DNA of 64,000 nucleotides from IMGVR_UViG_3300048672_001051:165657-229656, one strand, 5' to 3'. Counted from the first letter of the stretch, positions 17,155-54,760 are shown. Made by a program: numbers and translations. The notes: a model not told the origin generated them from the letters alone.

Positions 17155-20100
17155 TTACATACCTAAACTTTTCATTAGTGCATCTAAGTCATCTGGCGGA
17201 ACGTTACCATTTGAATTAGCGCCTTCTTGAATGTTAAGGTCACTAAACTCTTCAGGATCTGCACAGAAAGCCTCAAATTTCTGACGGATCTCGAAAAGTT
17301 TTGAAACAAGTGAACCGAAATATGTGTTTTCAGAAATGAATGTCTCCCACATTTTCAATTCACTTTCGTCTACCGGAATTCGACCCTTATTGTATAAAGA
17401 GATAAAATTCCGACAACCTTTTAAAGCCTTCGAATGAGAACCCCAAGTGATAATAAACAAAAGTTTATTAATATCACCAAGGGTCATCCGATATTCAGGT
17501 TTTTGCAATTCAGCAATAATAATCTTACGATTTTCAGGCAATGCCATATTGCGCAGAAAGAACATTTCAAAGTCCTTACTACCATTTTTGGCATGCTTAA
17601 TTGCTTCAATAACTTTTTCCTGAACCAAACGAGTATAAGCAAAAGAGAATTGTTTAAATTCTAAATCGCTAAGGGGCTGCAATAAAACAGGGTTAGGGAC
17701 ATTAGCAGTTTTGTATAAACCTTTATTTGCGACAAAGAATGCTTGATAACACTGCATTAAAGCAGTAGCAGTCCAAATGTCTAGGGTGGCAGGGCCAATA
17801 TTAGCTTTAGCAACAGAGGCATTAAGCAAATACTGTTGATAGCATGGAATGCCATTTTGAGGTGCCATTGGAACTTTGTTCAGTTTATAAACATGTTGAC
17901 CAATAGGTAACAACTTGTTAGTTGTTTCATACTCACCATCAATATACTCTTCATTCCAACATAATTCTTGCTCAAGAGGTTGAGGCCGAACAAATCGACG
18001 AAGAATTTCTTGACCAATTGGATTAGGAATAGCTAATGGTAGAGCATCACCATCACAATCACTTCGTGCTTCCAAAGCAATAGTAGGGCTGATTAACAGA
18101 ATGTCACTATTGTACCGAGGATTCAAATACGCGTGCAAATCAATATTATGCACTGTCTTCAAATACATTCGGAACAAGTTAACATCCCAAATACGAGGTA
18201 CTTGTAGCTGCATTTCCCAAAGTACAGGATTACGCACTGCTAAGCTACGAGGAACTTCGTTTAAAGCACGATCTACAGCTTGTTTGTCTAAAGTGCCATG
18301 CTCATTTAAACGCGCTAAGATGTCAATCTGAGAACTAACAAGACGTTCCCAATCATCACCAAAGGCTTCATTCGAGATACGTTCAAATTTAGACTGACTC
18401 ATAACAACAACAACATCAGGTGGTAGATAATGATCAACTACCTGTTTCATACCAAAGCCTTTCATACGAGGCTTGATAAGATGTTGAATTACCATTTGAG
18501 CGGCTTCTTCGTCTGAATAAAGCGTCGATTTAACTGCACGCAAATACTCGTCTAAAGCATAAGACTGTTGTCGATTGTTGTCAGGCATTAACATGTTTCG
18601 GAAAACTTTATTATACCCTTTCAGGTATTTATAGTTTTCACGAACAAGTCGCAAAATCTTAGACAATCGAATTAAAATGTCTGGATAATTTGTTTCGCCA
18701 CTCATAAGTCGACCAGTAAACCGGTTCAACAAATAAGCACTAGGCATCCGGACACAAGGGCCGCCGAGAGAGCTGAAATCCAAATAAAAACCATTCGGAT
18801 TATATTCAGCATTTAACAAGCGAGAATTAGATGGAAAAATTGCCTTCTTTGTTAATACAAAGTCGTCAGGTCCATACATAGGATTCTTACTAATTAAATC
18901 GGCAGGGGTGATAATTGGAAGTTCATCAACTTCTGAAAATACAGCGCGATCATCTGTTAGAATTTTAAACAATTCATAAACAGCTTTAATAGAATCAGGA
19001 TCACGATAACTTTCAAAAATATGATTTGCAAGTTCAAGCGATACGCCACCTTGGAATGTTAACATCTTCAAGGTTTCAAACATTACAGATTGAGGTTTCC
19101 AATCTGCGTAGATGTCAGTAATTTCAGTGTAGTTGATATAGACAAGTCCAATCTCAACGTTAACTTCATTACCAAAATTATCTACATATTTGTATTCAGG
19201 CAAAGACTGAGACGCAGCATTAATTTCAGCTTCATCCAATGAATTTAAATAGCCTGAATTACCACGTTTAACACTGGGTTTATAGTAGCCCAGCTTAACA
19301 GCTAGAGCAGCTCGTGCTAAAACAATGGTGTTTGATGCAGCTTTAACAGCATTCATACCAGTAACAATGTCCGGTACGAGAAAATCTTTTTCATTCCAAG
19401 TGTTATCTGTCGAGGAATCTCCAAGATATTCAGAAGCATTTGGATAACGTTCAGCAATAGCAGAGTCATCAAAAACATTCTTAAACATAATCTTACCAGT
19501 ATTGGTAAGAACTTTAGTAACACCTTTAAGTCCGGTGCTACTTGTGATACGGCAGTTACCTGCACGGCAAATACCTTTAAAACGAATTTTAAAAGAATTT
19601 GCAATGCTTGTCGCATCAATAGAAAGTACAGTAATGGTTTTAAAATTGTACAAGTCGATAGGACTTGACAAGTTATTCAACCCAACTGTAAATGTTTTAA
19701 AAGAAGGCTGATAAGTCTTGCCAGCTTCTACTAAAACTTCAGAAAAAATTTCTTCAATACTGAAAGAAACTTCTAAAGCTTGAGCTGCAATAGTTGCTGC
19801 AATTTCAATTTCACCGGAAACAAAACGTTTAGTGTCTGGGTCCATTGGATGAAATACAATAAAAGCTTCACGTTGGCAATCGTCTTTACGAGTAAAGACG
19901 TCACCATTAATGATATAATCCTGTGTAAAAACAGAATTACTAGGGTTTTCAATCTTTAGATGCTCTCCTAAAGAATGAGTTTTAAGACGAGCAGCTAACG
20001 ACTGTTTATTATCGAAAATAGTCAAGATCGAAGGAACTGTATCTCGAAGATTTTCAGAATAACCTGTGTTGCGAAACATAAAAGGCTGTTCACCTGTAAA

Positions 20101-20778
20101 CAGGCTAACAGTAGCAGTTTTAGACATACTACCTTCAGATGTCAGATGAATCTGACAATCACGGATAATATTTGGCCAATCTTTTTCACGAGGTTGTGAA
20201 TTAGAAATAATTTGGCCAAGAACAAACTTACCATTATTGATTTTGTCCAGATGTTGATTAAAACTAAGAATAACAAAAGAATGTTCAGATTTTTTCTGAG
20301 CATTAAAACTTACAGGCTTGGTATAATTTGCAAAAGACTGCAAATTATTAATATCAGTGTTTAACAAACCTGTATAGATGTCTTTGCTGTACTGTTGATA
20401 CATATTAAGACGATCTACTAAAATAAGATAAAATACTTGATTTTGATTAAGAATCAAATAATTATGATGACCAAAATAATCAATTCGACTATTAGAAGTC
20501 GAGCTGACTTCTACGAGAAAAGGATAATACGTTGTCTGCACTGGTGCAGTGCTAGGTGAAAACAATGTTTTACGAATAATAACTTCCATTGCATGAGTAT
20601 CACTGCGAGGGAAAGCTATAATAACATCATCATCAGCATTAATAGAATAATTGCACAGCCCACTGTAACCTTGAGGCAGGTGTCCAATAAGTTCTTCAGC
20701 TGTGCAATTTGCCGGAATATCACGAAAGGCTTGTGTGCGTACAATACCATCCAAACGTGCAATCGGAAATGAAGACAT
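17155..20778 (-). CDS. Single-chain two-barrel DNA-directed RNA polymerase 2 (putative)
   Basis: 1207 aa. RSDCDGD, AVRNPVL (beta'-like RxP), GNCRITSSTGLKGV (resembles beta GDKxxxRHGxKGV), KANIG and LVQEKVIEAIKH. Confidence 0.8.
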   Translation of the reverse strand: MSSFPIARLDGIVRTQAFRDIPANCTAEELIGHLPQGYSGLCNYSINADDDVIIAFPRSDTHAMEVIIRKTLFSPSTAPVQTTYYPFLVEVSSTSNSRIDYFGHHNYLILNQNQVFYLILVDRLNMYQQYSKDIYTGLLNTDINNLQSFANYTKPVSFNAQKKSEHSFVILSFNQHLDKINNGKFVLGQIISNSQPREKDWPNIIRDCQIHLTSEGSMSKTATVSLFTGEQPFMFRNTGYSENLRDTVPSILTIFDNKQSLAARLKTHSLGEHLKIENPSNSVFTQDYIINGDVFTRKDDCQREAFIVFHPMDPDTKRFVSGEIEIAATIAAQALEVSFSIEEIFSEVLVEAGKTYQPSFKTFTVGLNNLSSPIDLYNFKTITVLSIDATSIANSFKIRFKGICRAGNCRITSSTGLKGVTKVLTNTGKIMFKNVFDDSAIAERYPNASEYLGDSSTDNTWNEKDFLVPDIVTGMNAVKAASNTIVLARAALAVKLGYYKPSVKRGNSGYLNSLDEAEINAASQSLPEYKYVDNFGNEVNVEIGLVYINYTEITDIYADWKPQSVMFETLKMLTFQGGVSLELANHIFESYRDPDSIKAVYELFKILTDDRAVFSEVDELPIITPADLISKNPMYGPDDFVLTKKAIFPSNSRLLNAEYNPNGFYLDFSSLGGPCVRMPSAYLLNRFTGRLMSGETNYPDILIRLSKILRLVRENYKYLKGYNKVFRNMLMPDNNRQQSYALDEYLRAVKSTLYSDEEAAQMVIQHLIKPRMKGFGMKQVVDHYLPPDVVVVMSQSKFERISNEAFGDDWERLVSSQIDILARLNEHGTLDKQAVDRALNEVPRSLAVRNPVLWEMQLQVPRIWDVNLFRMYLKTVHNIDLHAYLNPRYNSDILLISPTIALEARSDCDGDALPLAIPNPIGQEILRRFVRPQPLEQELCWNEEYIDGEYETTNKLLPIGQHVYKLNKVPMAPQNGIPCYQQYLLNASVAKANIGPATLDIWTATALMQCYQAFFVANKGLYKTANVPNPVLLQPLSDLEFKQFSFAYTRLVQEKVIEAIKHAKNGSKDFEMFFLRNMALPENRKIIIAELQKPEYRMTLGDINKLLFIITWGSHSKALKGCRNFISLYNKGRIPVDESELKMWETFISENTYFGSLVSKLFEIRQKFEAFCADPEEFSDLNIQEGANSNGNVPPDDLDALMKSLGM

Positions 20779-20799
20779 AATACGTTCCTTAAAAAATGT

Positions 20800-21150
20800 C
20801 TAAAGTGTTGTGTATAAAAAACACTCTTGACTGTTGAAAAACAACGGTTCAGTTTGAATAAGATAACCATTGGTCATCAGATTCATCTGAATCCTCTTTA
20901 CAGCAGTATGATTTAAGAGTTCTGAATTTTTTAAAAACAAAAATCCTAAACCAGAATCTTTACAATAATCAATATTATTGAAAAAATCTGTGACATCAAA
21001 GTCTTGATAAGACTTAGAGTCAGAAGCTTTAATGACAGACTCAAGATCAATAAAAACATGTTCAACATTTTCAAAGATGTTGACAGATTGATTTTGAGAT
21101 TGTTTGGGTTGAAGAGCCAGTACAACTGGTTTCAAAATAGTATCAGACAT
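20800..21150 (-). CDS. Hypothetical protein
   Basis: 116-aa ORF with AGGA SD. Confidence 0.65.
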   Translation of the reverse strand: MSDTILKPVVLALQPKQSQNQSVNIFENVEHVFIDLESVIKASDSKSYQDFDVTDFFNNIDYCKDSGLGFLFLKNSELLNHTAVKRIQMNLMTNGYLIQTEPLFFNSQECFLYTTL

Positions 21151-21424
21151 GATAATAAGTCCTAAGAGGTATTGATAATAAAAAATCCATTATAGTCTGA
21201 ATTTAAACATGTGGTAACCTCTTTAACCACATTAAAATTCAAACCCTGAAATCGTAAAAACATTACACGATTCATCCTATCTGTTCAAAAGAATTACTGT
21301 AACCAGTAAAGTATTACAAAAATTGAAAGCAATAAAACAAAAAATGTTACATTAAACATCAAAGATGATTAACATTTTAACCTCCGTTAAAAATTGATTA
21401 AACTTAATGTAATGCTCCAACTTA

Positions 21425-21688
21425 TTAAGTCAGAGCATTTTGAACTTGAATGTTTTTAATACAGGCATTTTGTAAATAATGCCTATAAAAATACATCGCA
21501 ATTCTTTCACAACATAAACCTGCAATAAATGTTGTAGCTAATAGCCAACTAACACTCATTACAGGTGCTAATAATGTAACGGAAAACCATGAAATTAAAC
21601 AAAGAGAACTCAAAAGAACTACTGTATAAATTCTTGTAGAGTTTTCAAAAAATTTCATGTTAAGTGTTACTTGCCGCACGGGTTTCAT
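21425..21688 (-). CDS. Small membrane protein
   Basis: Two hydrophobic segments. Confidence 0.6.
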   Translation of the reverse strand: MKPVRQVTLNMKFFENSTRIYTVVLLSSLCLISWFSVTLLAPVMSVSWLLATTFIAGLCCERIAMYFYRHYLQNACIKNIQVQNALT

Positions 21689-21981
21689 GCAGATACAGTT
21701 CGGATGTTGTTAATCATCGAATTGATACCTTCGCCAGCTAAATAAGCAGCAGCAAAGAGCCCCGCATAGTAAAAAACTTCAATGGCTGCATGTGCAAACA
21801 GCATATGAAAGCCAAAGAAATAACCAGCAGCAGCAACAACTGCCATAGTAGCAGCGGTTACAAGAATACGTTGGCTGGTGTTATTGCTAACACAAATTTT
21901 AGCAGCAGGTGTGGCGGTTGCAGTAGTCATGATTTGAATCCTCAAAATTTGATTATGCAGCAACAGAATTGTTACTTGCAT
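21685..21981 (-). CDS. Small membrane protein
   Basis: Two hydrophobic segments; probable start MTTATA after GAGG. Confidence 0.6.
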   Translation of the reverse strand: MQVTILLLHNQILRIQIMTTATATPAAKICVSNNTSQRILVTAATMAVVAAAGYFFGFHMLFAHAAIEVFYYAGLFAAAYLAGEGINSMINNIRTVSA

Positions 21982-22138
21982 TTAAAAGAGTTGAATTTTC
22001 AGCGTATTGTTTATATAACGCAACGCATAAAAATCCAATGGCACTAACTAGCATAATGTTGGTAAAACCAACAACACTGCCAAGAATAATGCCAACAAAA
22101 AGCAGTAACCAGTCTTGGACACTGACTAAGATTTTCAT
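21953..22138 (-). CDS. Small membrane protein
   Basis: Hydrophobic 61 aa; GGAG SD; ATGA overlap. Confidence 0.55.
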   Translation of the reverse strand: MKILVSVQDWLLLFVGIILGSVVGFTNIMLVSAIGFLCVALYKQYAENSTLLNASNNSVAA

Positions 22139-22482
22139 ACAAAAGCTCCCTGAGGTAAACCTGTCCAGTCGCTATAAGCTTTGCCATAACCATGTTTATA
22201 CTGTAAGCCAATGCTTCTGTAGGCATAAACAAGATTTGTAAACATTGTTTTCAAAGCAAACCCGAATTGACCAAATCGAACATTCATTATGTTATACCTT
22301 GCCATTGCAAAGTAATAAATGAAGTAAGATTTAATAGCCCAAACAGGTAAGAATGCAAACATAGGCTTGCATTCATCTGAAAAGATTAAAACCACATATT
22401 CAAACTGCGTTTCCAGCGATCTTCCCATTATTGGTAAATCCTTTAGCAGTTGATTTAAGTTTAGAGAATACTTTACAGCCAA
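22135..22482 (-). CDS. Hypothetical protein
   Basis: ORF within the operon; start uncertain. Confidence 0.4.
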   Translation of the reverse strand: MAVKYSLNLNQLLKDLPIMGRSLETQFEYVVLIFSDECKPMFAFLPVWAIKSYFIYYFAMARYNIMNVRFGQFGFALKTMFTNLVYAYRSIGLQYKHGYGKAYSDWTGLPQGAFV

Positions 22483-22903
22483 TCAAACGAATACCTTGAC
22501 CAACTGTTTCAGCACCCCATTCACTGGGATATTCTACCCACTTACGTTTGCCAGTCACGATGTCTTTCTCATACTTACGATAGCCTAAAAATTTCTTCGT
22601 GAGAGCCAAAGTAATAGAGATAAAAAATCCAGAGACAACGGAAATAACAAGCGCTATCATTGATCCCGTCGAAGCCGCAGCGATAGTCAATACACCGCCG
22701 AAGAATAAATCAATCCAAACTTCATATCCCAAAGCAGTCTTTAGGAATTTTGGACTAAATTTATACAAGATCGCTAACAACTCGTAAGTAGTAAGACAAG
22801 CAGTCACAATGATTAGAGTCATCATGTTAATCACCTCGCTTAATAAACTTACAAAATAGTGATAAACAGTATCAATACACTGTTCACACATATTAGTATT
22901 CAA
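22400..22903 (-). CDS. Membrane protein
   Basis: About three hydrophobic segments; GAGG SD before MMTLI. Confidence 0.6.
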   Translation of the reverse strand: MNTNMCEQCIDTVYHYFVSLLSEVINMMTLIIVTACLTTYELLAILYKFSPKFLKTALGYEVWIDLFFGGVLTIAAASTGSMIALVISVVSGFFISITLALTKKFLGYRKYEKDIVTGKRKWVEYPSEWGAETVGQGIRLIGCKVFSKLKSTAKGFTNNGKIAGNAV

Positions 22904-22920
22904 AAATAAACACTAATATG

Positions 22921-22948
22921 TGTGAACGGTCTATATAGACCGTTCACA
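22921..22948. terminator. Perfect 28-bp palindrome
   Basis: TGTGAACGGTCTAT-ATAGACCGTTCACA just after the stop of the 521-aa gene. Confidence 0.5.
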
Positions 22949-22954
22949 AAATTG

Positions 22955-24597: not shown

Positions 24598-24612
24598 GAC
24601 CATTTTGCTTTT
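24598..24612 (-). promoter_or_regulatory. Phage promoter-like motif
   Basis: AAAAGCAAAATGGTC upstream of the RNAP2-containing operon. Confidence 0.7.
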
Positions 24613-26549: not shown

Positions 26550-26748
26550 GTAATGTTAATAATCGTTGAATACCTCGTAAACTCGTCAAATGACCATACT
26601 CACGGAGTACAAATTCAATCTGACGAGTAGTCATAGGTGTTGGATGGTTTAACCTTACAATACTTAAAATATCATTAATGATAAGATAATTATCATAAGG
26701 TGTACTCTTAGCTACCATAAGACAAATCCTTAAAGTGAAGACTTCCAA
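26485..26748 (-). CDS. Winged-helix DNA-binding protein (putative)
   Basis: MTTRQI...SLRGIQRLLTLLVDNGEL pattern. Confidence 0.55.
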   Translation of the reverse strand: MEVFTLRICLMVAKSTPYDNYLIINDILSIVRLNHPTPMTTRQIEFVLREYGHLTSLRGIQRLLTLLVDNGELSRHSNFKGSTYAFI

Positions 26749-27617
26749 ATTGAAAATGAACCGCTTAAAGTGGCATCTTCAACATAGAAATTCTTTTTCA
26801 AAAATTCAGCAAGCTCACGCTCGCCAGAATTATAATCCCGATTACGATTTAAAAGATTGTCGGTAACAAACCAAGCTTTCGCATTAATTGCAGCCATCAA
26901 ATAAATTTGAATAGCTTCAATTTTAACGGCATCTTTACGATTGCCATTAATTGATACAAAAACTTTCTCAGTTTCAGCATAATTAAGCTTATTAGCCATA
27001 AGCCCATAATTACTACGATAAATATCCGTAGAAGAGCCTTCAGCACCAATACCAATGAAAGACTGAGAAATATCAGCTTTCTTTTGATCTTTAGCTGTAT
27101 AAATAGATTTTGTAGTAAGTTTAACAGGGCCACGATTGGCTGTTGCCGCAGCATAAATGCAATGGCAAAGCAATGGTGCACACCAGCAAACTAAATGTTT
27201 ATTACGCATATTTTTAATATTATTTTGAAAAACTAAATTAGTACTCCATAAAGATTTAAAATCATAAGCATAATGAGCAACAGCTTGATCACGAGTATCA
27301 ACCTTTTTCTCAGCAAGATTTTTTGTTGGCAAATGACTATAAGTATTGCCAAAAATACTAGGACGACCTAAATAAACACCATTTGAGTTATTTTTTTTAT
27401 TAAGAATTAAATGGCCATAAACAGCCATCAAATAATAAGAAATTTTATTACGTTGTTCAAACCACAAGTCATAAACTTGTTGAACTTTAGCAGGATTAGA
27501 TCCAGCAAAACCATTATATTGCATAATCAATTTAATAAAATCTTTACTATTAGAAACAGTAAGATTTCCTACTTCAAGAATAGGGTCAAAACCTAATACA
27601 GTTCGTTTAGCTGCCAT
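26730..27617 (-). CDS. DUF4326-domain fusion protein
   Basis: VYLGRPSIFGN...LVCWCAPLLCH plus an extra C-terminal domain. Confidence 0.7.
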   Translation of the reverse strand: MAAKRTVLGFDPILEVGNLTVSNSKDFIKLIMQYNGFAGSNPAKVQQVYDLWFEQRNKISYYLMAVYGHLILNKKNNSNGVYLGRPSIFGNTYSHLPTKNLAEKKVDTRDQAVAHYAYDFKSLWSTNLVFQNNIKNMRNKHLVCWCAPLLCHCIYAAATANRGPVKLTTKSIYTAKDQKKADISQSFIGIGAEGSSTDIYRSNYGLMANKLNYAETEKVFVSINGNRKDAVKIEAIQIYLMAAINAKAWFVTDNLLNRNRDYNSGERELAEFLKKNFYVEDATLSGSFSIWKSSL

Positions 27618-29078: not shown

Positions 29079-29092
29079 GACCATTTTGCTTT
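29079..29092 (-). promoter_or_regulatory. Phage promoter-like motif
   Basis: AAAGCAAAATGGTC. Confidence 0.65.
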
Positions 29093-32240: not shown

Positions 32241-33254
32241 TTAATCTTCAGAAGGTTCTTCTACAACCTTAGGAAGTTTATCGAACAAGCGTTTAGGAAT
32301 CTTGCTCAATACGCCGTTGATCATTTCTGGAATTTGCATTGTCTGTAGTATTTCACCATACGCTACTGTTAACATAGCGTTACTTACAACTTTAGCGCGA
32401 GGGTCGTCGCTCACTACCGTTACGATTGCACTAGCGCTTGTAGCGATAGCTAGATCAGCAAATGGTGTACTTAACAGTACTTTAGCCATTGGCGGTACGT
32501 AAGGCTTTAGCTGTTCTTTGATCAGCTCAATTGCCATGCGACCAATTTCTAGTTTAGAGGCAAGAATCATTGCTTGAGCATGTTCTTGCGCTTGGTCGGT
32601 GATTACTTCTTTACCAGCTTCGGTTAAAGATTTTTTAGGAGCGGCCATGGTTGTTTCCTCTGTATCAGTGGTTGGTTGTGTTACGGTTGATATACTACTT
32701 GGAATCCAGCTGAAGAACTCTTCAGCCCATTCAGAAGCAGTTTCGTGGTCGTATACGCTGGGTTGAAAACTGTCATCTTGGTGCACCAAAGTTTCAATAC
32801 CGGCATAAGGTTCTTGCCAAGGTTTTAAATCTCCGGCAAATGATGCAAATAGCATATAAAAGAACTGGTCTCTTTTAGCTAAATAATTGATATCAAATAC
32901 ACCTCCACCTAGTTTTGAAGTAACTTCAAGTAAGTCCAAAAATTGCTTTTGCAAATGTTGCTCGACAATATTGTCTGCAGGGCAAGTAAGCCACAGCATA
33001 CCTTTGTATCGTCTCACATTTTGCCACTTACTTAAGAACAGTCTAGATGTTTCCGATGGGTTGGCATTTTCTCTTAAAAATGCTAACACATTTTCAACAT
33101 CTTTAAATGACTGTTTGTTTTTGGTCCAGTCGATAGTTGAAGTAGTAATATTTATCACTATTTCAATAAGTCTTTCGACTGCTTCTCCAAAATCGTTATC
33201 ATTCTCATATTGGCTTTGGTACATAGCCTCACTGAGAAATTCACTAATATCCAT
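32241..33254 (-). CDS. Hypothetical protein (possible internal start at 32648)
   Basis: 337-aa ORF; internal GAGG-ATG. Confidence 0.7.
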   Translation of the reverse strand: MDISEFLSEAMYQSQYENDNDFGEAVERLIEIVINITTSTIDWTKNKQSFKDVENVLAFLRENANPSETSRLFLSKWQNVRRYKGMLWLTCPADNIVEQHLQKQFLDLLEVTSKLGGGVFDINYLAKRDQFFYMLFASFAGDLKPWQEPYAGIETLVHQDDSFQPSVYDHETASEWAEEFFSWIPSSISTVTQPTTDTEETTMAAPKKSLTEAGKEVITDQAQEHAQAMILASKLEIGRMAIELIKEQLKPYVPPMAKVLLSTPFADLAIATSASAIVTVVSDDPRAKVVSNAMLTVAYGEILQTMQIPEMINGVLSKIPKRLFDKLPKVVEEPSED

Positions 33255-37483: not shown

Positions 37484-37498
37484 GACCATTTTGCTTTT
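37484..37498 (-). promoter_or_regulatory. Phage promoter-like motif
   Basis: AAAAGCAAAATGGTCGGTAATGAAGAT. Confidence 0.7.
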
Positions 37499-39616: not shown

Positions 39617-39631
39617 GACCATTTTGCTTTT
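39617..39631 (-). promoter_or_regulatory. Phage promoter-like motif
   Basis: AAGATCAAAAGCAAAATGGTCT. Confidence 0.7.
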
Positions 39632-40172: not shown

Positions 40173-40868
40173 TCATTTAGTAGAACCTTCGGCATTCAAA
40201 AAGTTTTTAAACTTTTTATGCCAGTCTTCTGTTGATAGATTGAACACTGGAATATCAAAGTGTTCTGCCAGACAAATTTGCAATGAGCAGTTACGTGTTA
40301 ACTCACTGCAATCAGCAGCTACTGTTTCACCATAATATGTTGCACATAAAACTGCATCAATAGGTGAACACAGGTCAGTGCCTAAGATTTCGAATACACT
40401 ACGAATTGCATATTGTTGTGCATTAAAACCTAAGTCACGACCTTTAGCTAACATTGAAGCCCAACCCTTATGGTGTCTTTGGGCAAGTTTACGAGCTTCA
40501 TTCCACAGCTCAGTTTTGTACATCATGTGATATACAGCTGTGCTAGTGTCAAGAGTCCACCCATAATTATCATAAGGTAGGTATATGTTCAAAGCTGTTT
40601 TAGAAAGTTTACCTTCTGCAATAGCTTTTACAAATCCTGCTTGAAATGCTTCTTCTGCCCCTCTAGAATTTCCTGTGTTCAGAGTGACAGTCATGTTCAA
40701 CTCTGGTCGAGAATGTTCAAGAGTGGCTAACCAATAAGACAGTTTTCCAATATTAGTTATTACTTCAGGTTCTAATGTTTTAAGATTATCCGTACCCAAT
40801 CCTGCTAAAGTCAATTTCTTCATACAGTTTATCTTAACCTCTGCTGTTGTGAAAGGAATGAGTTTCAT
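40173..40868 (-). CDS. Second, diverged SLOG/DprA-like protein
   Basis: LNTGNSRGAEEAF, IYLP, RSVFEILG, IPVFNL; paralog of 31131-31736. Confidence 0.65.
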   Translation of the reverse strand: MKLIPFTTAEVKINCMKKLTLAGLGTDNLKTLEPEVITNIGKLSYWLATLEHSRPELNMTVTLNTGNSRGAEEAFQAGFVKAIAEGKLSKTALNIYLPYDNYGWTLDTSTAVYHMMYKTELWNEARKLAQRHHKGWASMLAKGRDLGFNAQQYAIRSVFEILGTDLCSPIDAVLCATYYGETVAADCSELTRNCSLQICLAEHFDIPVFNLSTEDWHKKFKNFLNAEGSTK

Positions 40869-43192: not shown

Positions 43193-43207
43193 GACCATTT
43201 TGCTTTT
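43193..43207 (-). promoter_or_regulatory. Phage promoter-like motif
   Basis: AAAAGCAAAATGGTCTGTAATGAGGAT. Confidence 0.75.
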
Positions 43208-45630: not shown

Positions 45631-45651
45631 GACCATTTCGCTTGTGCTTTT
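45631..45651 (-). promoter_or_regulatory. Phage promoter-like motif (variant)
   Basis: AAAAGCACAAGCGAAATGGTCTTTAATGAGGAT. Confidence 0.65.
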
Positions 45652-49004: not shown

Positions 49005-49015
49005 ACCTCATAACA

Positions 49016-49030
49016 GACCATTTTGCTTTT
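49016..49030 (-). promoter_or_regulatory. Phage promoter-like motif
   Basis: AAGATCAAAAGCAAAATGGTCTGTTATGAGG. Confidence 0.75.
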
Positions 49031-49182
49031 GATCTTTATGGGACGCCAGTGTTTAACGGTACATTGGAAACCGATAGGTTATTATTTTCATAATAATTCC
49101 TCTTTGTTAGCAATCAAACATATAAGTACTATTATCAAATACTTATATGTTTGATTGAGGGTTGTGAGAAACCCTCAAAATA

Positions 49183-49368
49183 TTACTTCTTCCGTCTAGG
49201 TCGCCGACCTTTCCCTGACCCCTTTTTAAGGATCAGGGTTTTAACAATACGATGCTTCCCAAGGCGCATATCACGGGAGGCATAGTACTCTCCGTTATAT
49301 TCAGCTGGCCAAATACTCCAGTCTATTCCTTTGTATTCATCGGGTCCTTCCATTACAAGGACCCCCAA
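49183..49368 (-). CDS. Small basic protein
   Basis: Lys/Arg-rich tail. Confidence 0.5.
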   Translation of the reverse strand: MGVLVMEGPDEYKGIDWSIWPAEYNGEYYASRDMRLGKHRIVKTLILKKGSGKGRRPRRKK

Positions 49369-49646
49369 CCATTAGCCACAGCCCAGTCTCGAGCTGCCTC
49401 AACAGTCTGGAAAGTGTTAAAGGCTACTTTGCTGTAGCCTTTTGAGCGGAAAGGAGAGCACAAATACGTGCTCAAAATTCCTTTAACATGGAGAGTGAAT
49501 ACACCTTCACTCTCTTTCCGGACTATGAATCCGTTAAAACTCCAAGTTTCCATAATGAAACTCCTTAATAAGAACAGGCTCATTACACCTGTACACACTT
49601 TTGGAATGGAGAGTGTGCAAAAGAACTCCAAGGAATTATTCCACAT
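49353..49646 (-). CDS. Hypothetical protein
   Basis: Probable start METWS after TAAGGAG. Confidence 0.55.
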   Translation of the reverse strand: MWNNSLEFFCTLSIPKVCTGVMSLFLLRSFIMETWSFNGFIVRKESEGVFTLHVKGILSTYLCSPFRSKGYSKVAFNTFQTVEAARDWAVANGWGSL

Positions 49647-49732
49647 ATGGATATTATAAAACTAATACCCATAAATTGAATAACTTAAGTAGTTCTTTAT
49701 TTATACTGCCGAACTACGTGAGCAGTCTTCTT

Positions 49733-50035
49733 TTAAAGACCGAAGAGGTCTGCAATGGCATTAGCCACTGCAAGAAGGTCTTGGTCAATGCAGCTCAGGG
49801 GTGTGTCCCCTAAGCTAACGTGTCCGTCAATGACGACCCACAAATAGCGGCCTTCGTCGCCAAAGGTGACAAAGATTTCCGCCATGCCGCCAGCCTCTGC
49901 AGCTTCGACGAGTTGCTCGAAGCTTGCGACCTTTCCGTCAATCTCGACGGACTTTATCAGGCCTTGCAGTTGGTTAATATCCATAATGTATTCTCCAAAA
50001 TGATGGGCATCACCCCAATGTTGACACTTTACCAA
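49733..50035 (-). CDS. Hypothetical acidic protein
   Basis: Probable start MDINQ after GGAG. Confidence 0.6.
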   Translation of the reverse strand: MVKCQHWGDAHHFGEYIMDINQLQGLIKSVEIDGKVASFEQLVEAAEAGGMAEIFVTFGDEGRYLWVVIDGHVSLGDTPLSCIDQDLLAVANAIADLFGL

Positions 50036-50148
50036 TGCGGCAGGTGGTCAACGATAACCCGTATTACAATTATAAGAACCAACTAAGGATTCTCATAAGT
50101 GTAACATGTATGCAATTATACTCCCGCATACAAGGGGAGTTTCGCATG

Positions 50149-50334
50149 TTAGGGATAAACACGAACCCCTAACATGCAAGCCTTCACCTCGATCTCGCGA
50201 GGTGAAGGAGGTAATTGCGTGAACTGGGCGGGGTGGACTTCCCCCAAGACCAGTTCGACCATTGCGTCATACTCGGCCTGACGCGCGGCCTTTTCAGACT
50301 TGCGGGAAGCCTGAAAGAGATCTATGCTGAACAT
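50149..50334 (-). CDS. Hypothetical protein
   Basis: AGGAG SD; downstream of a promoter-like motif. Confidence 0.6.
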   Translation of the reverse strand: MFSIDLFQASRKSEKAARQAEYDAMVELVLGEVHPAQFTQLPPSPREIEVKACMLGVRVYP

Positions 50335-50370
50335 AGAGCACTCCTAAGAAAGAGGACAATCCTCACAAAA

Positions 50371-50391
50371 GACCATTTTGCTTTTGCTTTT
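50371..50391 (-). promoter_or_regulatory. Phage promoter-like motif
   Basis: AAAAGCAAAAGCAAAATGGTCTTTTGTGAGGAT. Confidence 0.75.
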
Positions 50392-50541
50392 GGTCTCGCG
50401 GAGGTACGAATTGGTGAGTTGGTTACAAGTTAGATTTCCCGTCTAACCAACTCACCGCACTATTGTTTCTGCTTCGGATCTTGATCTTGATCTTGATCCT
50501 AGTAGAAACAACCTACAGGGTTTGTGGCAACCCTCGTAACA

Positions 50542-50612
50542 GACCATTTTGCTTTTGCTTTTGCTTTGGCTTTTGCTTTTGCTTTTGCTTTTGCTTTTGC
50601 TTTTGCTTTTGC
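50542..50612 (-). promoter_or_regulatory. Phage promoter-like motif with 10 tandem AAAAGC hexamers
   Basis: Plus strand GACCATTTT then (GCTTTT)x10 at 50551-50610, one copy GCTTTG. Confidence 0.75.
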
Positions 50613-50649
50613 GGAGTGTAGAGAAATTCTACACTCCACCAATAACCCC

Positions 50650-51078
50650 TTAAAGGACAGTTAGATTGCACGGAATAACTGCTAACAATTTAGTCAGCTC
50701 CTCCTTATTTAGAACTGTGTCTCCATTTTTCTTCCTCCAATCATTAGCAGACCAGTACTTGACGTATTTTAGAACCATCTTAAGGTAATCTACCTCTTTA
50801 GCTGGGCCTGACAATATCAAATCGACAGGTCTAGACCTGTCTTTAATTAACCCTAACGAACTAGTTAAGGTGAGGATTGCCTTTGCAGATGGCAATCCTG
50901 TGCTAAATATTTCTAGCTGTTTATGTTTACTCATAGAGAGACCTTGGTAATCTGCCGTCAACAATACGTCTGACTTGTAAGGCACTACTACCTTTTTGTA
51001 GTCCTTGTCTTGTAGGGGTACAGACAATTCTAAATGAATTGTAACTGTGTTATCTGCAGTTTTACTTGATAAGTTCAT
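50650..51078 (-). CDS. Degenerate RNase H-like protein
   Basis: YVKYWSANDWRKKNGDTVLNKEE resembles the RNase HI WxxxGWxxxxxxPVKNxDL segment; catalytic acids not evident. Confidence 0.45.
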   Translation of the reverse strand: MNLSSKTADNTVTIHLELSVPLQDKDYKKVVVPYKSDVLLTADYQGLSMSKHKQLEIFSTGLPSAKAILTLTSSLGLIKDRSRPVDLILSGPAKEVDYLKMVLKYVKYWSANDWRKKNGDTVLNKEELTKLLAVIPCNLTVL

Positions 51079-51124
51079 AATTGTATCCTAGAAGTGGGGC
51101 TGCTATTACACAGCCCCGTTGGGT

Positions 51125-54100
51125 TTAAGCTTGTAAAGCTTGGATTAAACGGTACATCATTGACTCTGTATACATGTCGTATACTTTGCCATCAATGACC
51201 GCACCTTCAGCATCTTTCAACAAGACAAAGTTACTTGTCAATGGTGATTGATCGCTGAACATCAACGCATCGAGGGATGGTGCGCTCAAGTGCAAGGCAG
51301 CTACTTGACGCATCACTGCCATGAACTTAGCGCAGAACTGGTCTACGCTCATGTTCAATGAGCTGAAGTTGAACAGCAAGCCATTTGTGAAAACATCCAC
51401 AACAGCCTCTTTAGCCGCAGCTAGCCGGGCGATATACTCATCACGGCTTTCATCTTTTTTCTGCAAGATGAAACCAGGACGTATTATCTCGCTGACAGCC
51501 AGCTTCGAGCCAAGGCTTGAATGCTTCATGCCGTTCATAGCCTCTTCCTGCACCAACACACCAATTACGTATGCAACGGTGTTAAAGAATTCCTCATGCA
51601 TAGCTGCAGGAATGTCCGCCAATCCTTTACCATCCATACGTACAGAAGTATGGTATGTGAAGAATCGTTGTAGGTTCTTGGTATAAGAACCTACGTTGGC
51701 TTTCGCATCAGCAGATTCCTTGATAGTTGCAAACAACTCAACCCAAGAGAACTGATTAACGCTTGCGCCGCCAAAGCCAAGAGCGTTCATCTCTTTGGCC
51801 AGGTAGTTTTGATGCCACTTAGCAGCGAAGTACTTATCATCAAGCACCTTAGCTTCAAAAGTGTTCAACTTCACTTTACCATGTGAAGTCAAGCGAACCA
51901 AGTCACCGTCTGCATCATTTTGCAATGATAACAAGTAGTTAGCTGGCGCGAACACCGCGCAGTTGAAGATCTCAGCCATGTCTTTGTTCAACATGTCTTC
52001 TTCTACGAAGTTGGCCTCGGCTTCAGCTGCGATGCGCTTAGCTTTCAGGTAAGCGTTGCTGTCACGGCCTTGACCAGCTTTTTCAAACTTGGCGTTGGCC
52101 CGGTTAAGCTGTTGCAGCGCGTGGTGACGCTTAGGCAGCTTACTGTGTACCATCATACCAGTTTGTAGCTCTGGCATGATTACAGGATGCTTGGTAGCCA
52201 GCATTGTGCCACCATTACGCATGGCCAGGCACCACAGCTCATTGGCTTTAGAAGCCCAAGGAGCGCAGATCAAAGCGCCATACATACCCTCAACTTTCAG
52301 GCGACCCAACTGCTTACCCAAGATCTCGCATTGGGTGTATTGGAGCATGTTGACCGAGAAGTTCTCGACAAATGCTCCGATTGTTGGTTTGGCTTTTAAG
52401 TTCAAGGTGTACTCATCAACCTCATACTGACCAACCAGACCGCGAACGGCCTTGAGGAAGGTGTTAAAGTACCCTTGACTTTGAATCATTGTTGCATAGG
52501 CAGATGTTTCAGCCATATTCCCACAAAGGATGCGTTGCCCTGTTAAGTAGGTCAGTGGTGTACCTGCCTTGTCAGTCAACTCAACCCAACGTACATTAGG
52601 ATCGTTGATACCTAATACACAGGCAACGTCCACAAAGAACGCGCGGTGAACATACCCTTCACCTAATGTGTCTAGGTCTAGCCCATATGTTGCCACCAAA
52701 CGGGCGATCTTACCAACAACAGAAGCTAGTGGTAGTGTATATACCCCAGCGGCTGTTTTGTCGCTCAGACGACCCTGCACCCAATCTAGGGCCATGTTGA
52801 CGTCGTCTTTCTTGTCAGAATTAAGCTCGAGAGACATTGCATGTTGCAGCATGTCTTGAACCATCTGTTGGCCGTGAGTGGTACGCATCATGTCGAACTC
52901 GCTCGACACGACGTTAACCACTTTTGGTTTGCGAGTGATAACACCAGACTCGCGCAACTCACGTAGCGCATCTGGCAGTGGAGCCATAGAGCCAGCGTCT
53001 GCCAACTCTGCGACTTTGTTAAACACGACAGCTATCAGCAATGGATCATCGCCAATGATGTCATGTTTCTTATACGCTGCTTCCAACAACTTAGCAGCGT
53101 TATCAATGTAGCTGTTGACCACAAAGTCACGGTCAACAAACTTATAACCATGACTAATTGTGTAATGGTTAGTCGCAACCATCTGTACATCGTTCAGCAC
53201 ACAGACTTCGACCTCAAGTCCGTTGATCTCAACAACTTCCCAAATTGAGTTCAACTCGGTTGGATCGTTGATGATGTCCATAACTTCGCAGTTAGGATGT
53301 TTGGCTTGATACAGACCAGCCAAACCACCTTTATATGAAGCTTTTGAAGCCAGAGATACGCCAGCATCAGCCAAGTCTTTATCGACAAAACCTGCCCATG
53401 AGAGGGTTGACTTAATCAAGCCTTCGGTATTATCGCCAACAGCACGACAGAAACCAACTGTCAGCATTGTATCGCTGTCAGCCAAAATATTACCTGCCAC
53501 AAGAGCGTTACGCAGCTCAGTGGCAGTCTTAAGGTTGCGCTTGGCAACAGCTTTAGCCTTACCGGCTTTAGACGCCTTTACAGCGTCGTAGGCAGCTGTT
53601 GCAGCGTCAAGTGCTACGTTAGGGTCACGCAACACCCAAACCTCACCAAAGGCGAATCCGACGCCGTCCTTATTGCACAGCTTCTCAAAGCGAGAAGCTG
53701 TGTGCTTGATGCTCAAGGCTGACAGCAGTGAACCATCAGCTTGTTCAGTCAGCATGTAGCCTAACTGTTCATGCTCACGAATGTAACCGTCAGCAGCGTG
53801 GCTGCCAGATACCAAGCCATAAACACCTGGCTTGAAATGCTCCAGATACTGGTTTACAGGGTACTTACTGTAAACCATTGGATGTGAAACGGGTGTAACA
53901 GCACCGTTCGCTGCGCGAAGTACGAGGTGCTTCGCTGGATCAGCGATCAGCGCTTCGTAAGACAGGTTGCCAGCGCGCAGGAGGATCAATTTCTCGATCC
54001 AACTCAAGCTCATGAGCTTGATATTAAAGCCACGAGCACCAGTGTCGTGAAACACATGGATACGGCTCAGCGCATCAACCACTTCAGCAGTGGTATTACT

Positions 54101-54760
54101 GCTAGTGATCTTGACACTAGCTTGAACAAAGCCTAGCACAGATTCAACTGCACTGTACTTCATTGCAGTGGCCTTCATGCCATGACCTAGGCGGATATTA
54201 ACACCACCTTTGTCAAACTGAGGCTTTTCCGCAATGTTACGGCGGAAAGCCTCAGCCATCGGCTGAATTGGGTACGAGTCCAATTGGCCCGCGCACTTCA
54301 CAGCCCACTCTATTAGAGCGAGCTTGTCATCTGTCAAGCCGTGACCGAAATAGACCAACACTTTGGCGATGGAGTTAGAGTACTCCAGGCCACGGGTGTT
54401 GACGAATATTGAATAAAGCTCAAGCATCGCCCGAGCCTTGTTCAAACCTCCGACAACTTCTAGGTCCTCCTGATCCAATTCCACTTTCGTGAAACCAGAT
54501 ACAGCAGGGGCGTTAATGACACGCAAGATGTCACCCTTCGCAACGGCCATTGATTCTACATAGTAGAACTCTTTGGCCATGTGCTGGATGGTGGCATCCA
54601 GCTTATCGCGGTCGACAAGGTGTGGGTACACCTCAGCACGGTCTTTTTTGGAGCCGGAAACATAGGCCAAAACAGCGGCCTTGTTGGACCAGTTCAGGAC
54701 TGATTGATACATAGCTGTGGTCTTCATGGTTGAAGTTCCTTTGGTGGTTGAGTTAGTCAT
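51125..54760 (-). CDS. Single-chain two-barrel DNA-directed RNA polymerase 1 (YonO/QDE-1-like fold, putative)
   Basis: 1211 aa. Catalytic-type QNDADGD, upstream ATKHP (RxP-like), beta-like RAVG..GLIKS, C-terminal KANVG and LVQEEAMNGMKH shared with 17155-20778. Confidence 0.75.
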   Translation of the reverse strand: MTNSTTKGTSTMKTTAMYQSVLNWSNKAAVLAYVSGSKKDRAEVYPHLVDRDKLDATIQHMAKEFYYVESMAVAKGDILRVINAPAVSGFTKVELDQEDLEVVGGLNKARAMLELYSIFVNTRGLEYSNSIAKVLVYFGHGLTDDKLALIEWAVKCAGQLDSYPIQPMAEAFRRNIAEKPQFDKGGVNIRLGHGMKATAMKYSAVESVLGFVQASVKITSSNTTAEVVDALSRIHVFHDTGARGFNIKLMSLSWIEKLILLRAGNLSYEALIADPAKHLVLRAANGAVTPVSHPMVYSKYPVNQYLEHFKPGVYGLVSGSHAADGYIREHEQLGYMLTEQADGSLLSALSIKHTASRFEKLCNKDGVGFAFGEVWVLRDPNVALDAATAAYDAVKASKAGKAKAVAKRNLKTATELRNALVAGNILADSDTMLTVGFCRAVGDNTEGLIKSTLSWAGFVDKDLADAGVSLASKASYKGGLAGLYQAKHPNCEVMDIINDPTELNSIWEVVEINGLEVEVCVLNDVQMVATNHYTISHGYKFVDRDFVVNSYIDNAAKLLEAAYKKHDIIGDDPLLIAVVFNKVAELADAGSMAPLPDALRELRESGVITRKPKVVNVVSSEFDMMRTTHGQQMVQDMLQHAMSLELNSDKKDDVNMALDWVQGRLSDKTAAGVYTLPLASVVGKIARLVATYGLDLDTLGEGYVHRAFFVDVACVLGINDPNVRWVELTDKAGTPLTYLTGQRILCGNMAETSAYATMIQSQGYFNTFLKAVRGLVGQYEVDEYTLNLKAKPTIGAFVENFSVNMLQYTQCEILGKQLGRLKVEGMYGALICAPWASKANELWCLAMRNGGTMLATKHPVIMPELQTGMMVHSKLPKRHHALQQLNRANAKFEKAGQGRDSNAYLKAKRIAAEAEANFVEEDMLNKDMAEIFNCAVFAPANYLLSLQNDADGDLVRLTSHGKVKLNTFEAKVLDDKYFAAKWHQNYLAKEMNALGFGGASVNQFSWVELFATIKESADAKANVGSYTKNLQRFFTYHTSVRMDGKGLADIPAAMHEEFFNTVAYVIGVLVQEEAMNGMKHSSLGSKLAVSEIIRPGFILQKKDESRDEYIARLAAAKEAVVDVFTNGLLFNFSSLNMSVDQFCAKFMAVMRQVAALHLSAPSLDALMFSDQSPLTSNFVLLKDAEGAVIDGKVYDMYTESMMYRLIQALQA

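What the first reader, a model, noticed from the sequence alone, without database searches (positions are those of the whole stretch)
17155..54760. Two paralogous single-chain two-barrel RNA polymerases in one phage
Both ORFs are ~1210 aa with the same order of motifs: a beta-like R...GxK motif, (R/K)xP, DxDGD (SDCDGD / NDADGD), KAN(I/V)G and LVQE.....KH. They are otherwise very diverged and sit in regions of different GC content. Established: DxDGD binds the catalytic Mg of two-barrel polymerases, and single-chain versions include SPbeta YonO and crAss-like virion RNAPs. Inference: an early/middle and a middle/late enzyme arose by ancient duplication.
Basis: partly seen in the sequence, partly recalled or inferred. 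Interest (0 to 1): 0.85.

Follow-up and report, generated by a model that had tools for sequence, protein, structure and literature searches.

The report
Two divergent single-chain phage RNA polymerases
A 230-kb uncultured jumbo phage carries two very distantly related ~1,210-residue genes that both look like single-chain versions of the cellular two-barrel RNA polymerase, from families no database annotates, and one of them sits just upstream of a run of ten identical promoter-like sequences.

Summary
ORF A (17155-20778, minus strand, 1207 aa) and ORF B (51125-54760, minus strand, 1211 aa) carry the same ordered motifs, and those motifs are invariant in each protein's family.

- **ORF A:** its AlphaFold model (pLDDT 84) gives 41 significant Foldseek PDB hits. 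All are beta/Rpb2 or beta' subunits of multisubunit RNA polymerases.
- **ORF B:** its model has no significant PDB hit. It does match a phage protein annotated "RNA dependent RNA polymerase" (E 3.7e-5). Its family profile aligns to A's family over the catalytic half (hhalign 97%, E 1e-10).
- **Databases:** Pfam, PHROGs, NCBIfam and PDB sequence searches find nothing for either protein.
- **Relationship:** A and B belong to two old, separate clades. Homology is supported. A duplication inside this phage lineage is not shown, and the GC3 gap (26% vs 52%) also fits acquisition of one gene.
- **Promoter-like motif:** AAAGCAAAATGGTC occurs ten times, always co-oriented with the genes, and only downstream of B. 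Another phage with a B-family gene has the same layout with a different motif.

Phages with two two-barrel polymerases are already known (phiKZ, AR9, P23-45). I class this as a new variant of a known kind. Activity, timing and virion packaging are all untested.

The parts
17155..20778 (-). RNAP-A: 1207-aa single-chain two-barrel RNA polymerase candidate (family A)
   Evidence: ORF. 23 homologues, none annotated. AlphaFold2 pLDDT 84.3, pTM 0.79. Foldseek PDB: 41 hits at E<=1e-3, all RNAP beta/Rpb2 or beta' chains.
19513..19551 (-). A: beta-like barrel motif R410ITSSTGLKGVTK422
   Evidence: G416 and K418 invariant, and K422 invariant or nearly so, in family A. Coordinates checked. From my memory of E. 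coli beta, it resembles the 'RHGNKGV' lysine loop.
19339..19359 (-). A: second beta-like motif G474MNAVKA480
Evidence: G474, M475, N476 and K479 invariant. Aligns with 'S.GS.KG' of family B in the collinear hhalign.
18226..18234 (-). A: R849-N-P851, start of the beta'-like barrel
   Evidence: R849 and P851 invariant. The best, non-significant, hhalign stretch against bacterial beta' covers A 834-927 against E. coli beta' 411-481.
18046..18060 (-). A: D907CDGD911, predicted Mg-binding aspartate triad
   Evidence: D907, D909, G910 and D911 invariant. Coordinates checked.
17794..17808 (-). A: K991ANIG995 inside a 38-residue helix (980-1017), bridge-helix-like
   Evidence: K991 and G995 invariant. 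Helix seen in the model.
17593..17628 (-). A: L1051VQE...K1061H1062 in the next long helix, trigger-loop-base-like
   Evidence: K1061 and H1062 invariant. Helix 1038-1061 in the model.
51125..54760 (-). RNAP-B: 1211-aa single-chain two-barrel RNA polymerase candidate (family B)
   Evidence: ORF. 40 representatives by exhaustive phmmer. pLDDT 77.6, pTM 0.76. hhalign to family A 97%, E 1.1e-10. BFVD Foldseek hits to a phage 'RNA dependent RNA polymerase' at 3.7e-5 and to a 'minor tail protein' at 4.3e-5. No significant PDB fold hit.
53411..53446 (-). B: beta-like motif R439AVGDNTEGLIK450
   Evidence: G436, R439 and K450 invariant in family B. Aligned with A's motif, but alone it reaches only E 0.023.
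52184..52192 (-). B: K857-H-P859
   Evidence: K857 and P859 invariant.
51902..51916 (-). B: D949ADGD953, predicted Mg-binding triad
   Evidence: D949 invariant; D951, G952 and D953 in 36 of 37.
51689..51703 (-). B: K1020ANVG1024 in a 38-residue helix, bridge-helix-like
   Evidence: K1020 nearly invariant. Helix at model residues 995-1032, which is protein 1006-1043.
51521..51556 (-). B: L1069VQE...K1079H1080
   Evidence: Q1071, M1075 and K1079 nearly invariant.
50542..50555 (-). Promoter-like motif AAAGCAAAATGGTC, first copy, about 570 nt downstream of the stop codon of B
   Evidence: 10 copies found against 1.06 expected, all on the minus strand.
50547..50612 (-). (GCAAAA)x11 hexamer array, overlapping and upstream of the first motif copy
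50371..50384 (-). Motif copy
49016..49029 (-). Motif copy, 11 nt upstream of a start codon
48024..48037 (-). Motif copy, 33 nt upstream of the next gene. It lies inside one mechanically called ORF.
45631..45644 (-). Motif copy with 2 mismatches
43193..43206 (-). Motif copy
39617..39630 (-). Motif copy
37484..37497 (-). Motif copy
29079..29092 (-). Motif copy
24598..24611 (-). Last motif copy, 77 nt upstream of the 521-aa ORF that heads the gene run ending in RNAP-A. Conserved at the matching site in relative L036.

Best explanation
The window is the last 64 kb of a 229,656-bp uncultured jumbo-phage contig. It encodes two single-chain DNA-dependent RNA polymerases of the two-barrel superfamily. 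In each, a beta-like barrel carrying the conserved lysines lies near residues 400-480, and a beta'-like barrel carrying [RK]xP...DxDGD lies near residues 850-950. A long bridge-like helix (KANxG) and a second helix (LVQE..KH) follow. The barrel order is that of known single-chain two-barrel enzymes.

**Shown:**
- The ORFs, the motifs and their conservation.
- A's structural likeness to RNAP beta/beta'.
- Homology of A and B over the catalytic half.
- The ten-copy motif and where it lies.

**Inferred working model:**
- The long minus-strand transcription unit starts near 59.3 kb.
- B is its fifth gene and is made first, by host RNAP or by an injected enzyme.
- B then initiates at the AAAGCAAAATGGTC sites, which begin about 570 nt after its stop codon and run to 24.6 kb.
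- The last of these sites heads the gene run that contains A.
- A then transcribes a further gene class from promoters that I could not define.

A and B belong to two old sister families. Whether this phage holds both through an ancient duplication or through acquisition of one gene is open.
For: **A is RNAP-like**
- Model pLDDT 84.3, pTM 0.79.
- All 41 Foldseek PDB hits at E<=1e-3 are RNAP second-largest or largest subunits. The best are 7d58_B (1.6e-5), poxvirus 7amv_B and M. tuberculosis 9e84_C, with probability 1.00 for the beta/Rpb2 chains and 0.77-0.87 for the beta' chains.

**A and B are homologous**
- hhalign 97%, E 1.1e-10 over 233 columns.
- The B-core HMM hits A-family members directly: L008 3e-6, L036 9e-6, L020 1e-11.
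- The joint core has invariant D-x-D-G-D, E, K, T and K.
- The strand and helix order around RxP...DxDGD is the same in both models.

**B is structurally RNAP-like**
- BFVD hits to a phage 'RNA dependent RNA polymerase' (E 3.7e-5, 858 columns) and two others at E<=4.3e-5.
- A weak hhalign to a YonO profile with the motifs in register (E 0.0023).

**Both are under selection**
- Motif residues are invariant across 20 and 37 family members.
- A-family genes are interrupted by homing-endonuclease-type inserts in ME3 and other phages, as yonO is.

**Promoter model**
- 10 motif copies against 1.06 expected, all co-oriented with the genes and all between 50.6 and 24.6 kb.
- 9 of 10 are intergenic, mostly 11-94 nt upstream of a start codon.
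- One copy is conserved at the matching site in a relative.
- There is no consistent hairpin.
- Locus L028, which has a B-family gene, carries 11 co-oriented copies of a different 16-mer, all downstream of the polymerase gene.
- B-family genes lie 1-5 kb after a divergent junction in L025, L028 and L029, as in the window.

**Pair in a relative**
- The closest A homologue (84%) and the closest B homologue (90%) come from one metagenome, SRR28032195.
Against: - No enzymatic, transcriptomic or proteomic data exist.
- The B model has no significant PDB fold match. The best is E 1.4; crAss-like gp66 scores E 4.9 and a beta' chain 5.4.
- No sequence method links either family to a characterised RNAP. 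Pfam, PHROGs and NCBIfam give nothing. PDB HMM searches give nothing. hhalign against 39 bacterial beta' and 33 beta sequences gives E 0.17-0.8.
- The N-terminal halves of A and B are not significantly alike on their own (E 0.023).
- Foldseek TM-scores for A are low (0.12-0.17), so the matches are partial.
- Assigning the motif to B rather than to A, to host RNAP plus a phage factor, or to RNA processing rests only on position and on one parallel locus.
- No second promoter class for A was found.
Confidence: 0.8

Rival explanations
1. One of the two enzymes is packaged in the virion and injected, as in N4, phiKZ, AR9, crAss-like phages and P23-45. The other is the non-virion enzyme. The motif would then be the early promoter of the injected enzyme, not of B.
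For: Every well-studied phage with two of its own RNAPs packages one of them (PMC7598289, PMC10770324). The B model matches a chunk of a protein annotated 'minor tail protein' (E 4.3e-5), which recalls the tape-measure-fused vRNAP of P23-45. No convincing sigma-70 promoter excess was found upstream of B's operon: 15 sites against 11.2 expected.
Against: Neither gene lies in a structural module. Both sit among small early-type ORFs. Both are compact at about 1,210 aa with no fused structural domain. The motif begins only after B, and in L028 only after the B-family gene. That layout is what a polymerase made first would give.
Confidence: 0.3
2. A and B are two-barrel polymerases with a job other than general transcription. 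Candidates are priming DNA replication, or RNA-templated RNA synthesis as in QDE-1-type enzymes.
For: The two-barrel fold also serves RdRPs and archaeal PolD (PMC7824862, PMC10770324). The best named BFVD match of B is annotated 'RNA dependent RNA polymerase'. B-family neighbours include RNase H and SSB. Iyer et al. raise RNAP-based priming for some jumbo phages (PMC7824862).
Against: The 'RdRP' label on phage YonO-like proteins is inherited from Pfam naming, and YonO itself is a DNA-dependent RNAP (PMC5467207). A's PDB hits are all DNA-dependent RNAPs, and no PolD chain appears among the 50 best listed. The repeated, oriented, gene-proximal motif is typical of promoters.
Confidence: 0.1
3. 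B is not a polymerase. The shared motifs and the hhalign hit reflect a shared non-catalytic module or chance, and only A is an RNAP.
For: There is no significant PDB fold match for B. No sequence match to any characterised polymerase exists. The first 172 residues of the B model are poorly predicted.
Against: The region shared with A is exactly the catalytic one, [RK]xP...DxDGD...AKxxVG...Q....KH, with the acidic triad invariant in 36-37 of 37 B-family members. Residues 200-1170 of the model are confident. BFVD gives probability-1.00 matches over 858-971 columns to phage proteins, one of them annotated as a polymerase.
Confidence: 0.07

Closest known systems
Thermus phage P23-45 gp64 (non-virion) and gp96 (virion, tape-measure-fused) RNA polymerases (Chaban et al. 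2024, PMC10770324)
   Same: One phage carries two single-chain two-barrel RNAPs. They are homologous to each other but very diverged, and are proposed to act in sequence.
   Different: In P23-45 one enzyme is the N-terminus of a 5,002-residue tape-measure protein, and late genes use host RNAP. Here both are free-standing proteins of about 1,210 aa in non-structural regions of a 230-kb genome. No sequence relationship to gp64 or gp96 was found or tested directly. In-phage duplication is not shown here.
YonO of Bacillus prophage SPbeta and YonO-like 'RdRP' proteins of phages (Forrest et al. 2017, PMC5467207; Iyer et al. 2021, PMC7824862)
   Same: A single polypeptide with both barrels, [RK]xP...DxDGD, phage-encoded, and often split by homing-endonuclease inserts.
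   Different: YonO is about 840 aa. A and B are about 1,210 aa. hhalign of family A against a 6-sequence YonO profile finds nothing, and family B reaches only E 0.0023 at 12.5% probability. Pfam RdRP does not hit any member.
Multisubunit RNAPs: bacterial beta/beta', eukaryotic Rpb2/Rpb1, poxvirus and ASFV enzymes, and the split msRNAPs of phiKZ/AR9-type jumbo phages (PMC7598289)
   Same: All significant PDB fold matches of A are to these enzymes. The motifs map to the beta lysine loop, beta' RxP...NADFDGD and the bridge helix. phiKZ and AR9 also carry two sets.
   Different: A and B are single chains of about 135 kDa, not 4-5 subunits. There is no significant sequence or profile similarity to beta or beta'. 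TM-scores are only 0.12-0.17.
crAss-like phage phi14:2 gp66 virion RNAP (PDB 6VR4) and Neurospora QDE-1
   Same: Single-chain two-barrel architecture.
   Different: gp66 is 2,180 aa and virion-packaged. It appears for B only at E 4.9 and is not among A's 50 best listed hits.
Acinetobacter phage vB_AbaM_ME3 gp152 + gp154 (annotated 'hypothetical protein')
   Same: True family-A member: 31% identity over 91% of A, HMM E 2e-199 and 1e-99. It is the only cultured-phage relative found.
   Different: It is split by an endonuclease gene (gp153). ME3 has no family-B gene. Its A-type gene lies about 8 kb from the genome end, roughly where B lies in this contig.

Membership tests
Two-barrel (double-psi beta-barrel) RNA polymerase superfamily | beta'-type barrel carrying the [RK]xP ... 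DxDGD/DxDxD metal-binding loop | tested here: met
   A has R849xP...D907CDGD and B has K857xP...D949ADGD, invariant in their families. The strand / helix / strand / DxDGD / strand order is identical in both models.
Two-barrel (double-psi beta-barrel) RNA polymerase superfamily | Second (beta-type) barrel supplying conserved basic residues, N-terminal to the beta'-type barrel in single-chain enzymes | tested here: inconclusive
   A has G416-x-K418...K422 plus G474MN..K479. B has R439...K450 plus K477. All are invariant or nearly so, and they are collinear. A's fold hits are mainly to beta/Rpb2 chains. I could not inspect coordinates to confirm the barrel topology. The A-B similarity here is not significant alone (E 0.023).
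Two-barrel (double-psi beta-barrel) RNA polymerase superfamily | Overall fold similarity to solved two-barrel polymerases | tested here: met
   Met for A: 41 PDB hits at E<=1e-3, all RNAP beta or beta' chains. Not met directly for B against the PDB. B is linked through BFVD phage 'RdRP' hits and through homology to A.
Two-barrel (double-psi beta-barrel) RNA polymerase superfamily | Bridge helix and trigger-loop base after the catalytic barrel | tested here: inconclusive
   In both models a 38-residue helix carries KANxG and a following helix carries LVQE..KH. Equating them with the bridge helix ('KTA..GY', recalled from E. coli beta') and the trigger loop is my inference, not a superposition.
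Two-barrel (double-psi beta-barrel) RNA polymerase superfamily | Template-dependent RNA synthesis | not testable with these tools
   Needs biochemistry.
YonO-like / eukaryotic-RdRP-like family (Pfam RdRP) | Significant sequence or profile match to YonO or to Pfam RdRP | tested here: not met
   Pfam finds nothing for any of the 57 family members. hhalign against a YonO profile gives no relevant hit for A, and E 0.0023 at 12.5% probability for B.
Multisubunit RNAP beta / beta' (Pfam RNA_pol_Rpb2_*, RNA_pol_Rpb1_*) | Significant sequence or profile match to beta or beta' | tested here: not met
   Pfam finds nothing. hhalign against 39 beta' and 33 beta sequences gives E 0.17-0.8, although the best local stretches fall on RxP...NADFDGD.
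Family A (ME3 gp152/gp154-like proteins; unnamed) | Full-length HMM match with conserved motif set | tested here: met
   ORF A has 23 homologues from E 0 to 2e-97, 14 IMG/VR loci and ME3. It forms a clade with SH-aLRT 100.
Family B (unnamed; metagenomic only) | Full-length HMM match with conserved motif set | tested here: met
   ORF B has 40 representatives at E<=1e-3, 19 of them at E<=1e-30. It forms a clade with SH-aLRT 100.
Virion-packaged phage RNAP (N4 gp50, phiKZ vRNAP, crAss gp66, P23-45 gp96) | Presence in virions, or fusion to or placement within a structural module | not testable with these tools
   The window has no structural genes. Neighbours are small unknown ORFs, a DprA-like protein and DUF4326. 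Needs virion proteomics.

The most novel reading that the evidence does not exclude
This phage runs a largely host-independent transcription cascade on two free-standing single-chain two-barrel polymerases from two previously undescribed families. B reads the AAAGCAAAATGGTC promoters. A is structurally closer to cellular beta/beta' than to YonO, QDE-1 or gp66. On this reading A would be a compact fused beta-beta' enzyme bridging the multisubunit and single-chain clades. It would also be a minimal, promoter-specific RNAP usable as a tool.
Probability: 0.25. Interest if true: 0.85.

Novelty: new variant of a known kind. Interest (0 to 1): 0.68.

Why it matters
Single-chain two-barrel RNA polymerases are rare windows onto how the cellular transcription machine can be pared down. 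Only a few have been studied: YonO, crAss gp66, P23-45 gp64 and gp96, and QDE-1.

Two more families appear here, each with dozens of members and invisible to Pfam, PHROGs, NCBIfam and PDB sequence searches. One of them is present, unannotated, in the cultured Acinetobacter phage ME3, which gives an experimental entry point.

The pairing of a B-family gene with a run of identical downstream motifs, seen in two unrelated phages, offers a directly testable enzyme-promoter pair. It also means that some jumbo phages currently described as lacking an RNA polymerase, ME3 among them, probably have one.

Tried and rejected
**Searches that found nothing**
- Pfam, PHROGs and NCBIfam on A and B, and Pfam on every family member: no hit.
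- PDB sequence and profile searches with A, B, both family profiles and a joint core profile: no relevant hit. The only near-hit was a NusG KOW stretch at E 0.98.
- tblastn of B against 50,697 phage records: nothing.
- Word-indexed search with the B alignment: only B itself and its 90% relative.
- IMG/VR scans for family B, by protein pattern and by a degenerate DNA pattern: only the window's own contig.

**Comparisons that were not significant**
- hhalign of the N-terminal halves of A and B.
- hhalign against a shallow YonO profile.
- hhalign against proteobacteria-dominated beta and beta' profiles.

**Other leads that went nowhere**
- ME3 gp187 (1183 aa) as a possible second polymerase: it has no DxDGD and no HMM hit.
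- A second promoter class (AATAATAACTA): not clearly above chance.
- A hairpin or terminator reading of the main motif: stems form at 3 of 7 sites only, and z-scores are unremarkable.
- Sigma-70-type promoters upstream of B: no excess.
- The 21-bp repeat at the end of L038 is a terminal tandem repeat, not a promoter.
- Neighbours of B have no homologues near other family members.

I did not fetch the YonO-like genes of Clostridium botulinum phages, because those records are toxin-carrying phage genomes.


Full report
**What is in the sequence**

The window is contig positions 165,657-229,656 of IMGVR_UViG_3300048672_001051, a 229,656-bp uncultured viral genome, and the window's end is the contig's end. 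From 59.3 kb down to position 1, nearly all genes lie on the minus strand. A short plus-strand block begins at 59.8 kb.

The two largest ORFs are A (17155-20778, 1207 aa) and B (51125-54760, 1211 aa), both on the minus strand. There is one correction: B's beta-like motif is R439...G-L-I-K450, not G-x-K.

The two proteins are otherwise almost unrecognisable to each other (BLASTP E 0.01-0.03). GC differs as reported: 36.5% against 48.3%, and GC3 26% against 52%.

**Families**

A has 23 homologues in the 5.8-billion-protein collection, none with a Pfam domain or an informative name, and 14 loci in IMG/VR, mostly on 140-243-kb contigs. Its only relative in a cultured phage is Acinetobacter jumbo phage vB_AbaM_ME3. 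There the gene is annotated as two hypothetical proteins (gp152 and gp154) split by an endonuclease gene. Similar splits occur in several IMG/VR relatives. The same happens to yonO in SPbeta-like phages.

B had only one word-index hit. An exhaustive phmmer search of 1.84 billion representatives found 40 relatives of about 1,000-1,500 aa.

In both families the motif residues are invariant or nearly so. Pfam, PHROGs, NCBIfam and PDB sequence searches find nothing for either protein or for any family member.

**Are they two-barrel polymerases?**

For A, the AlphaFold2 model is confident (pLDDT 84.3, pTM 0.79). All 41 Foldseek PDB hits with E<=1e-3 are the second-largest or largest subunit of multisubunit RNAPs, from human Pol III, poxvirus, mycobacteria, archaea, yeast Pol I-III, ASFV and Thermus. 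TM-scores are low (0.12-0.17), so the match covers a core, not the whole protein. No single-chain enzyme appears among the 50 best hits listed.

For B, the model is good from about residue 185 on (pLDDT 77.6) but has no significant PDB match. Against BFVD it has three probability-1.00 matches:
- an unnamed 529-aa protein (E 1e-7);
- a 1,048-aa 'RNA dependent RNA polymerase' of a podovirus (E 3.7e-5, 858 columns);
- a chunk of a siphovirus 'minor tail protein' (E 4.3e-5).

The family profiles of A and B align at 97% probability, E 1.1e-10, over A 838-1112 and B 848-1155. This is the region holding [RK]xP, DxDGD, KANxG and LVQE..KH. An HMM of B's core hits A-family proteins directly. A joint core alignment keeps D-x-D-G-D, E, K, T and K invariant.

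The N-terminal halves align collinearly, with the lysine motifs in register, but not significantly on their own.

Against a small YonO profile, B gives a weak alignment with motifs in register (E 0.0023) and A gives nothing. Against bacterial beta' and beta profiles nothing is significant, although the best local stretches fall on RxP...NADFDGD. This matches the published remark that two-barrel families share little beyond the DxDxD region (PMC10770324).

My reading: A is a two-barrel RNAP with high confidence. B is one with good confidence, through homology to A plus the BFVD matches.

**Are they paralogues from a duplication?**

They are homologous. A maximum-likelihood tree of 70 catalytic cores gives two clean clades (SH-aLRT 100 each) separated by about 3.2 substitutions per site.

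Each clade is widespread without the other:
- ME3 has A only.
- L025 carries two B-type genes in tandem, of 1,209 and 1,107 aa.

The A+B pair probably recurs in one close relative, because the 84% A homologue and the 90% B homologue come from the same metagenome.

In ME3 and in the 216-kb contig of P0004, the A-type gene lies 4-8 kb from the genome or contig end. That is roughly where B lies here. Together with the two-fold GC3 gap, this makes acquisition of the B segment at least as plausible as an ancient in-lineage duplication. The data do not decide between them.

**How it probably works**

AAAGCAAAATGGTC occurs ten times (nine exact copies) against 1.06 expected. Every copy is on the minus strand, and all lie between 50,555 and 24,598. 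The extended consensus is about 30 nt long. Nine of the ten copies are intergenic, mostly 11-94 nt upstream of a start codon.

None lies upstream of B or downstream of 24.6 kb. The first copy is about 570 nt after B's stop codon and is preceded by (GCAAAA)x11. The last copy heads the gene run that ends with A, and it is conserved at the matching position in relative L036. No consistent hairpin forms at the motif.

In L028, a different phage with a B-family gene, a different 16-mer (AATTTAAATGCTTTGA) occurs 11 times. All copies are co-oriented with the genes and all lie downstream of the polymerase gene. B-family genes in L025, L028 and L029 also sit 1-5 kb after a divergent junction.

I infer that B is made early and initiates at these sites. 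This would include transcription of A, which then serves another gene class. None of this is tested. A virion-packaged role for one enzyme remains a live rival.

**Comparison with what is known**

Two two-barrel RNAPs in one phage are established for phiKZ and AR9 (multisubunit; PMC7598289). For P23-45 they are two single chains proposed to come from an ancient duplication (PMC10770324). [quoted passage not shown]

YonO-like single-chain enzymes are known in 0305phi8-36-type jumbo phages (PMC7824862). ME3 shares its structural genes with that phage.

What is new here:
- two sequence families outside every library searched;
- both present as free-standing proteins of about 1,210 aa in one jumbo phage;
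- A resembling cellular beta/beta' more than the solved single-chain enzymes;
- a candidate cognate promoter.

I found no paper that calls ME3 gp152/gp154 a polymerase.

**Verdict**

This is a new variant of a known kind, with interest 0.68.

Noticed in passing
window 2892-16230 (minus strand): A tandem array of about 34-37 consecutive ORFs of 120-160 aa, directly downstream of RNAP-A. 31 of them are linked as paralogues at 20-46% identity. GC is 27.5% and GC3 19%. No Pfam, PHROGs or NCBIfam match. This is a very large lineage-specific gene expansion of unknown function.
   Followed up: partly
window 1-64000: A strong compositional gradient along one transcription direction: GC rises from about 26-29% (2-16 kb) through 32-42% (16-48 kb) to 44-50% (48-58 kb). 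Gene GC3 runs from 19% to 53%. This suggests a mosaic origin, or strong class-specific codon usage.
   Followed up: partly
window 50547-50612: (TTTTGC)x11 on the plus strand, which reads (GCAAAA)n in the direction of transcription. It repeats the upstream half of the promoter-like motif and abuts the motif's first copy. It could be a polymerase-binding array or a slippage product.
   Followed up: no
L001 (ME3 222114-226849); L008, L014, L015, L016, L018: Family-A genes are repeatedly split or interrupted. ME3 has an endonuclease gene between the two halves. In L014 and L016 the break falls just after the KANxG helix motif, and L016 has a 1.4-kb insert there. yonO is interrupted in the same way in SPbeta-like phages.
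   Followed up: partly
L025 5994-9623 and 10001-13324: Two family-B paralogues in tandem (1,209 aa with DADGD, 1,107 aa with DGDGD) on a 15-kb metagenomic contig. A third ORF of at least 1,096 aa lies on the opposite strand and matches neither family.
   Followed up: partly
L028 10859-15942: Eleven co-oriented copies of AATTTAAATGCTTTGA downstream of a family-B gene. Several are followed about 35 nt later by a conserved 'AAGGCAGCAGTTTCC' element.
   Followed up: partly
L020 8756-11908 (IMGVR_UViG_3300027419_000035): A 1,051-aa protein that scores with both family HMMs (A 8e-85, B 3.4e-9). It is a useful bridge sequence for profile building.
   Followed up: partly
window 40173-40868, 26730-27617, 32241-33254: These are the only other recognisable genes in 64 kb: a DprA-like protein (PHROG 768), a DUF4326 protein and a DUF7566 protein. 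Only five window ORFs besides A have ME3 homologues. There are no tRNA genes.
   Followed up: yes
window 59450-59856: A 400-bp AT-rich divergent intergenic region between the leftward and rightward gene blocks. It contains short tandem repeats (59623-59649, 59715-59760) and G-rich blocks (GGGGGTAGGGGG, GGGGGTGGGGG). It may be an origin or an early control region.
   Followed up: no
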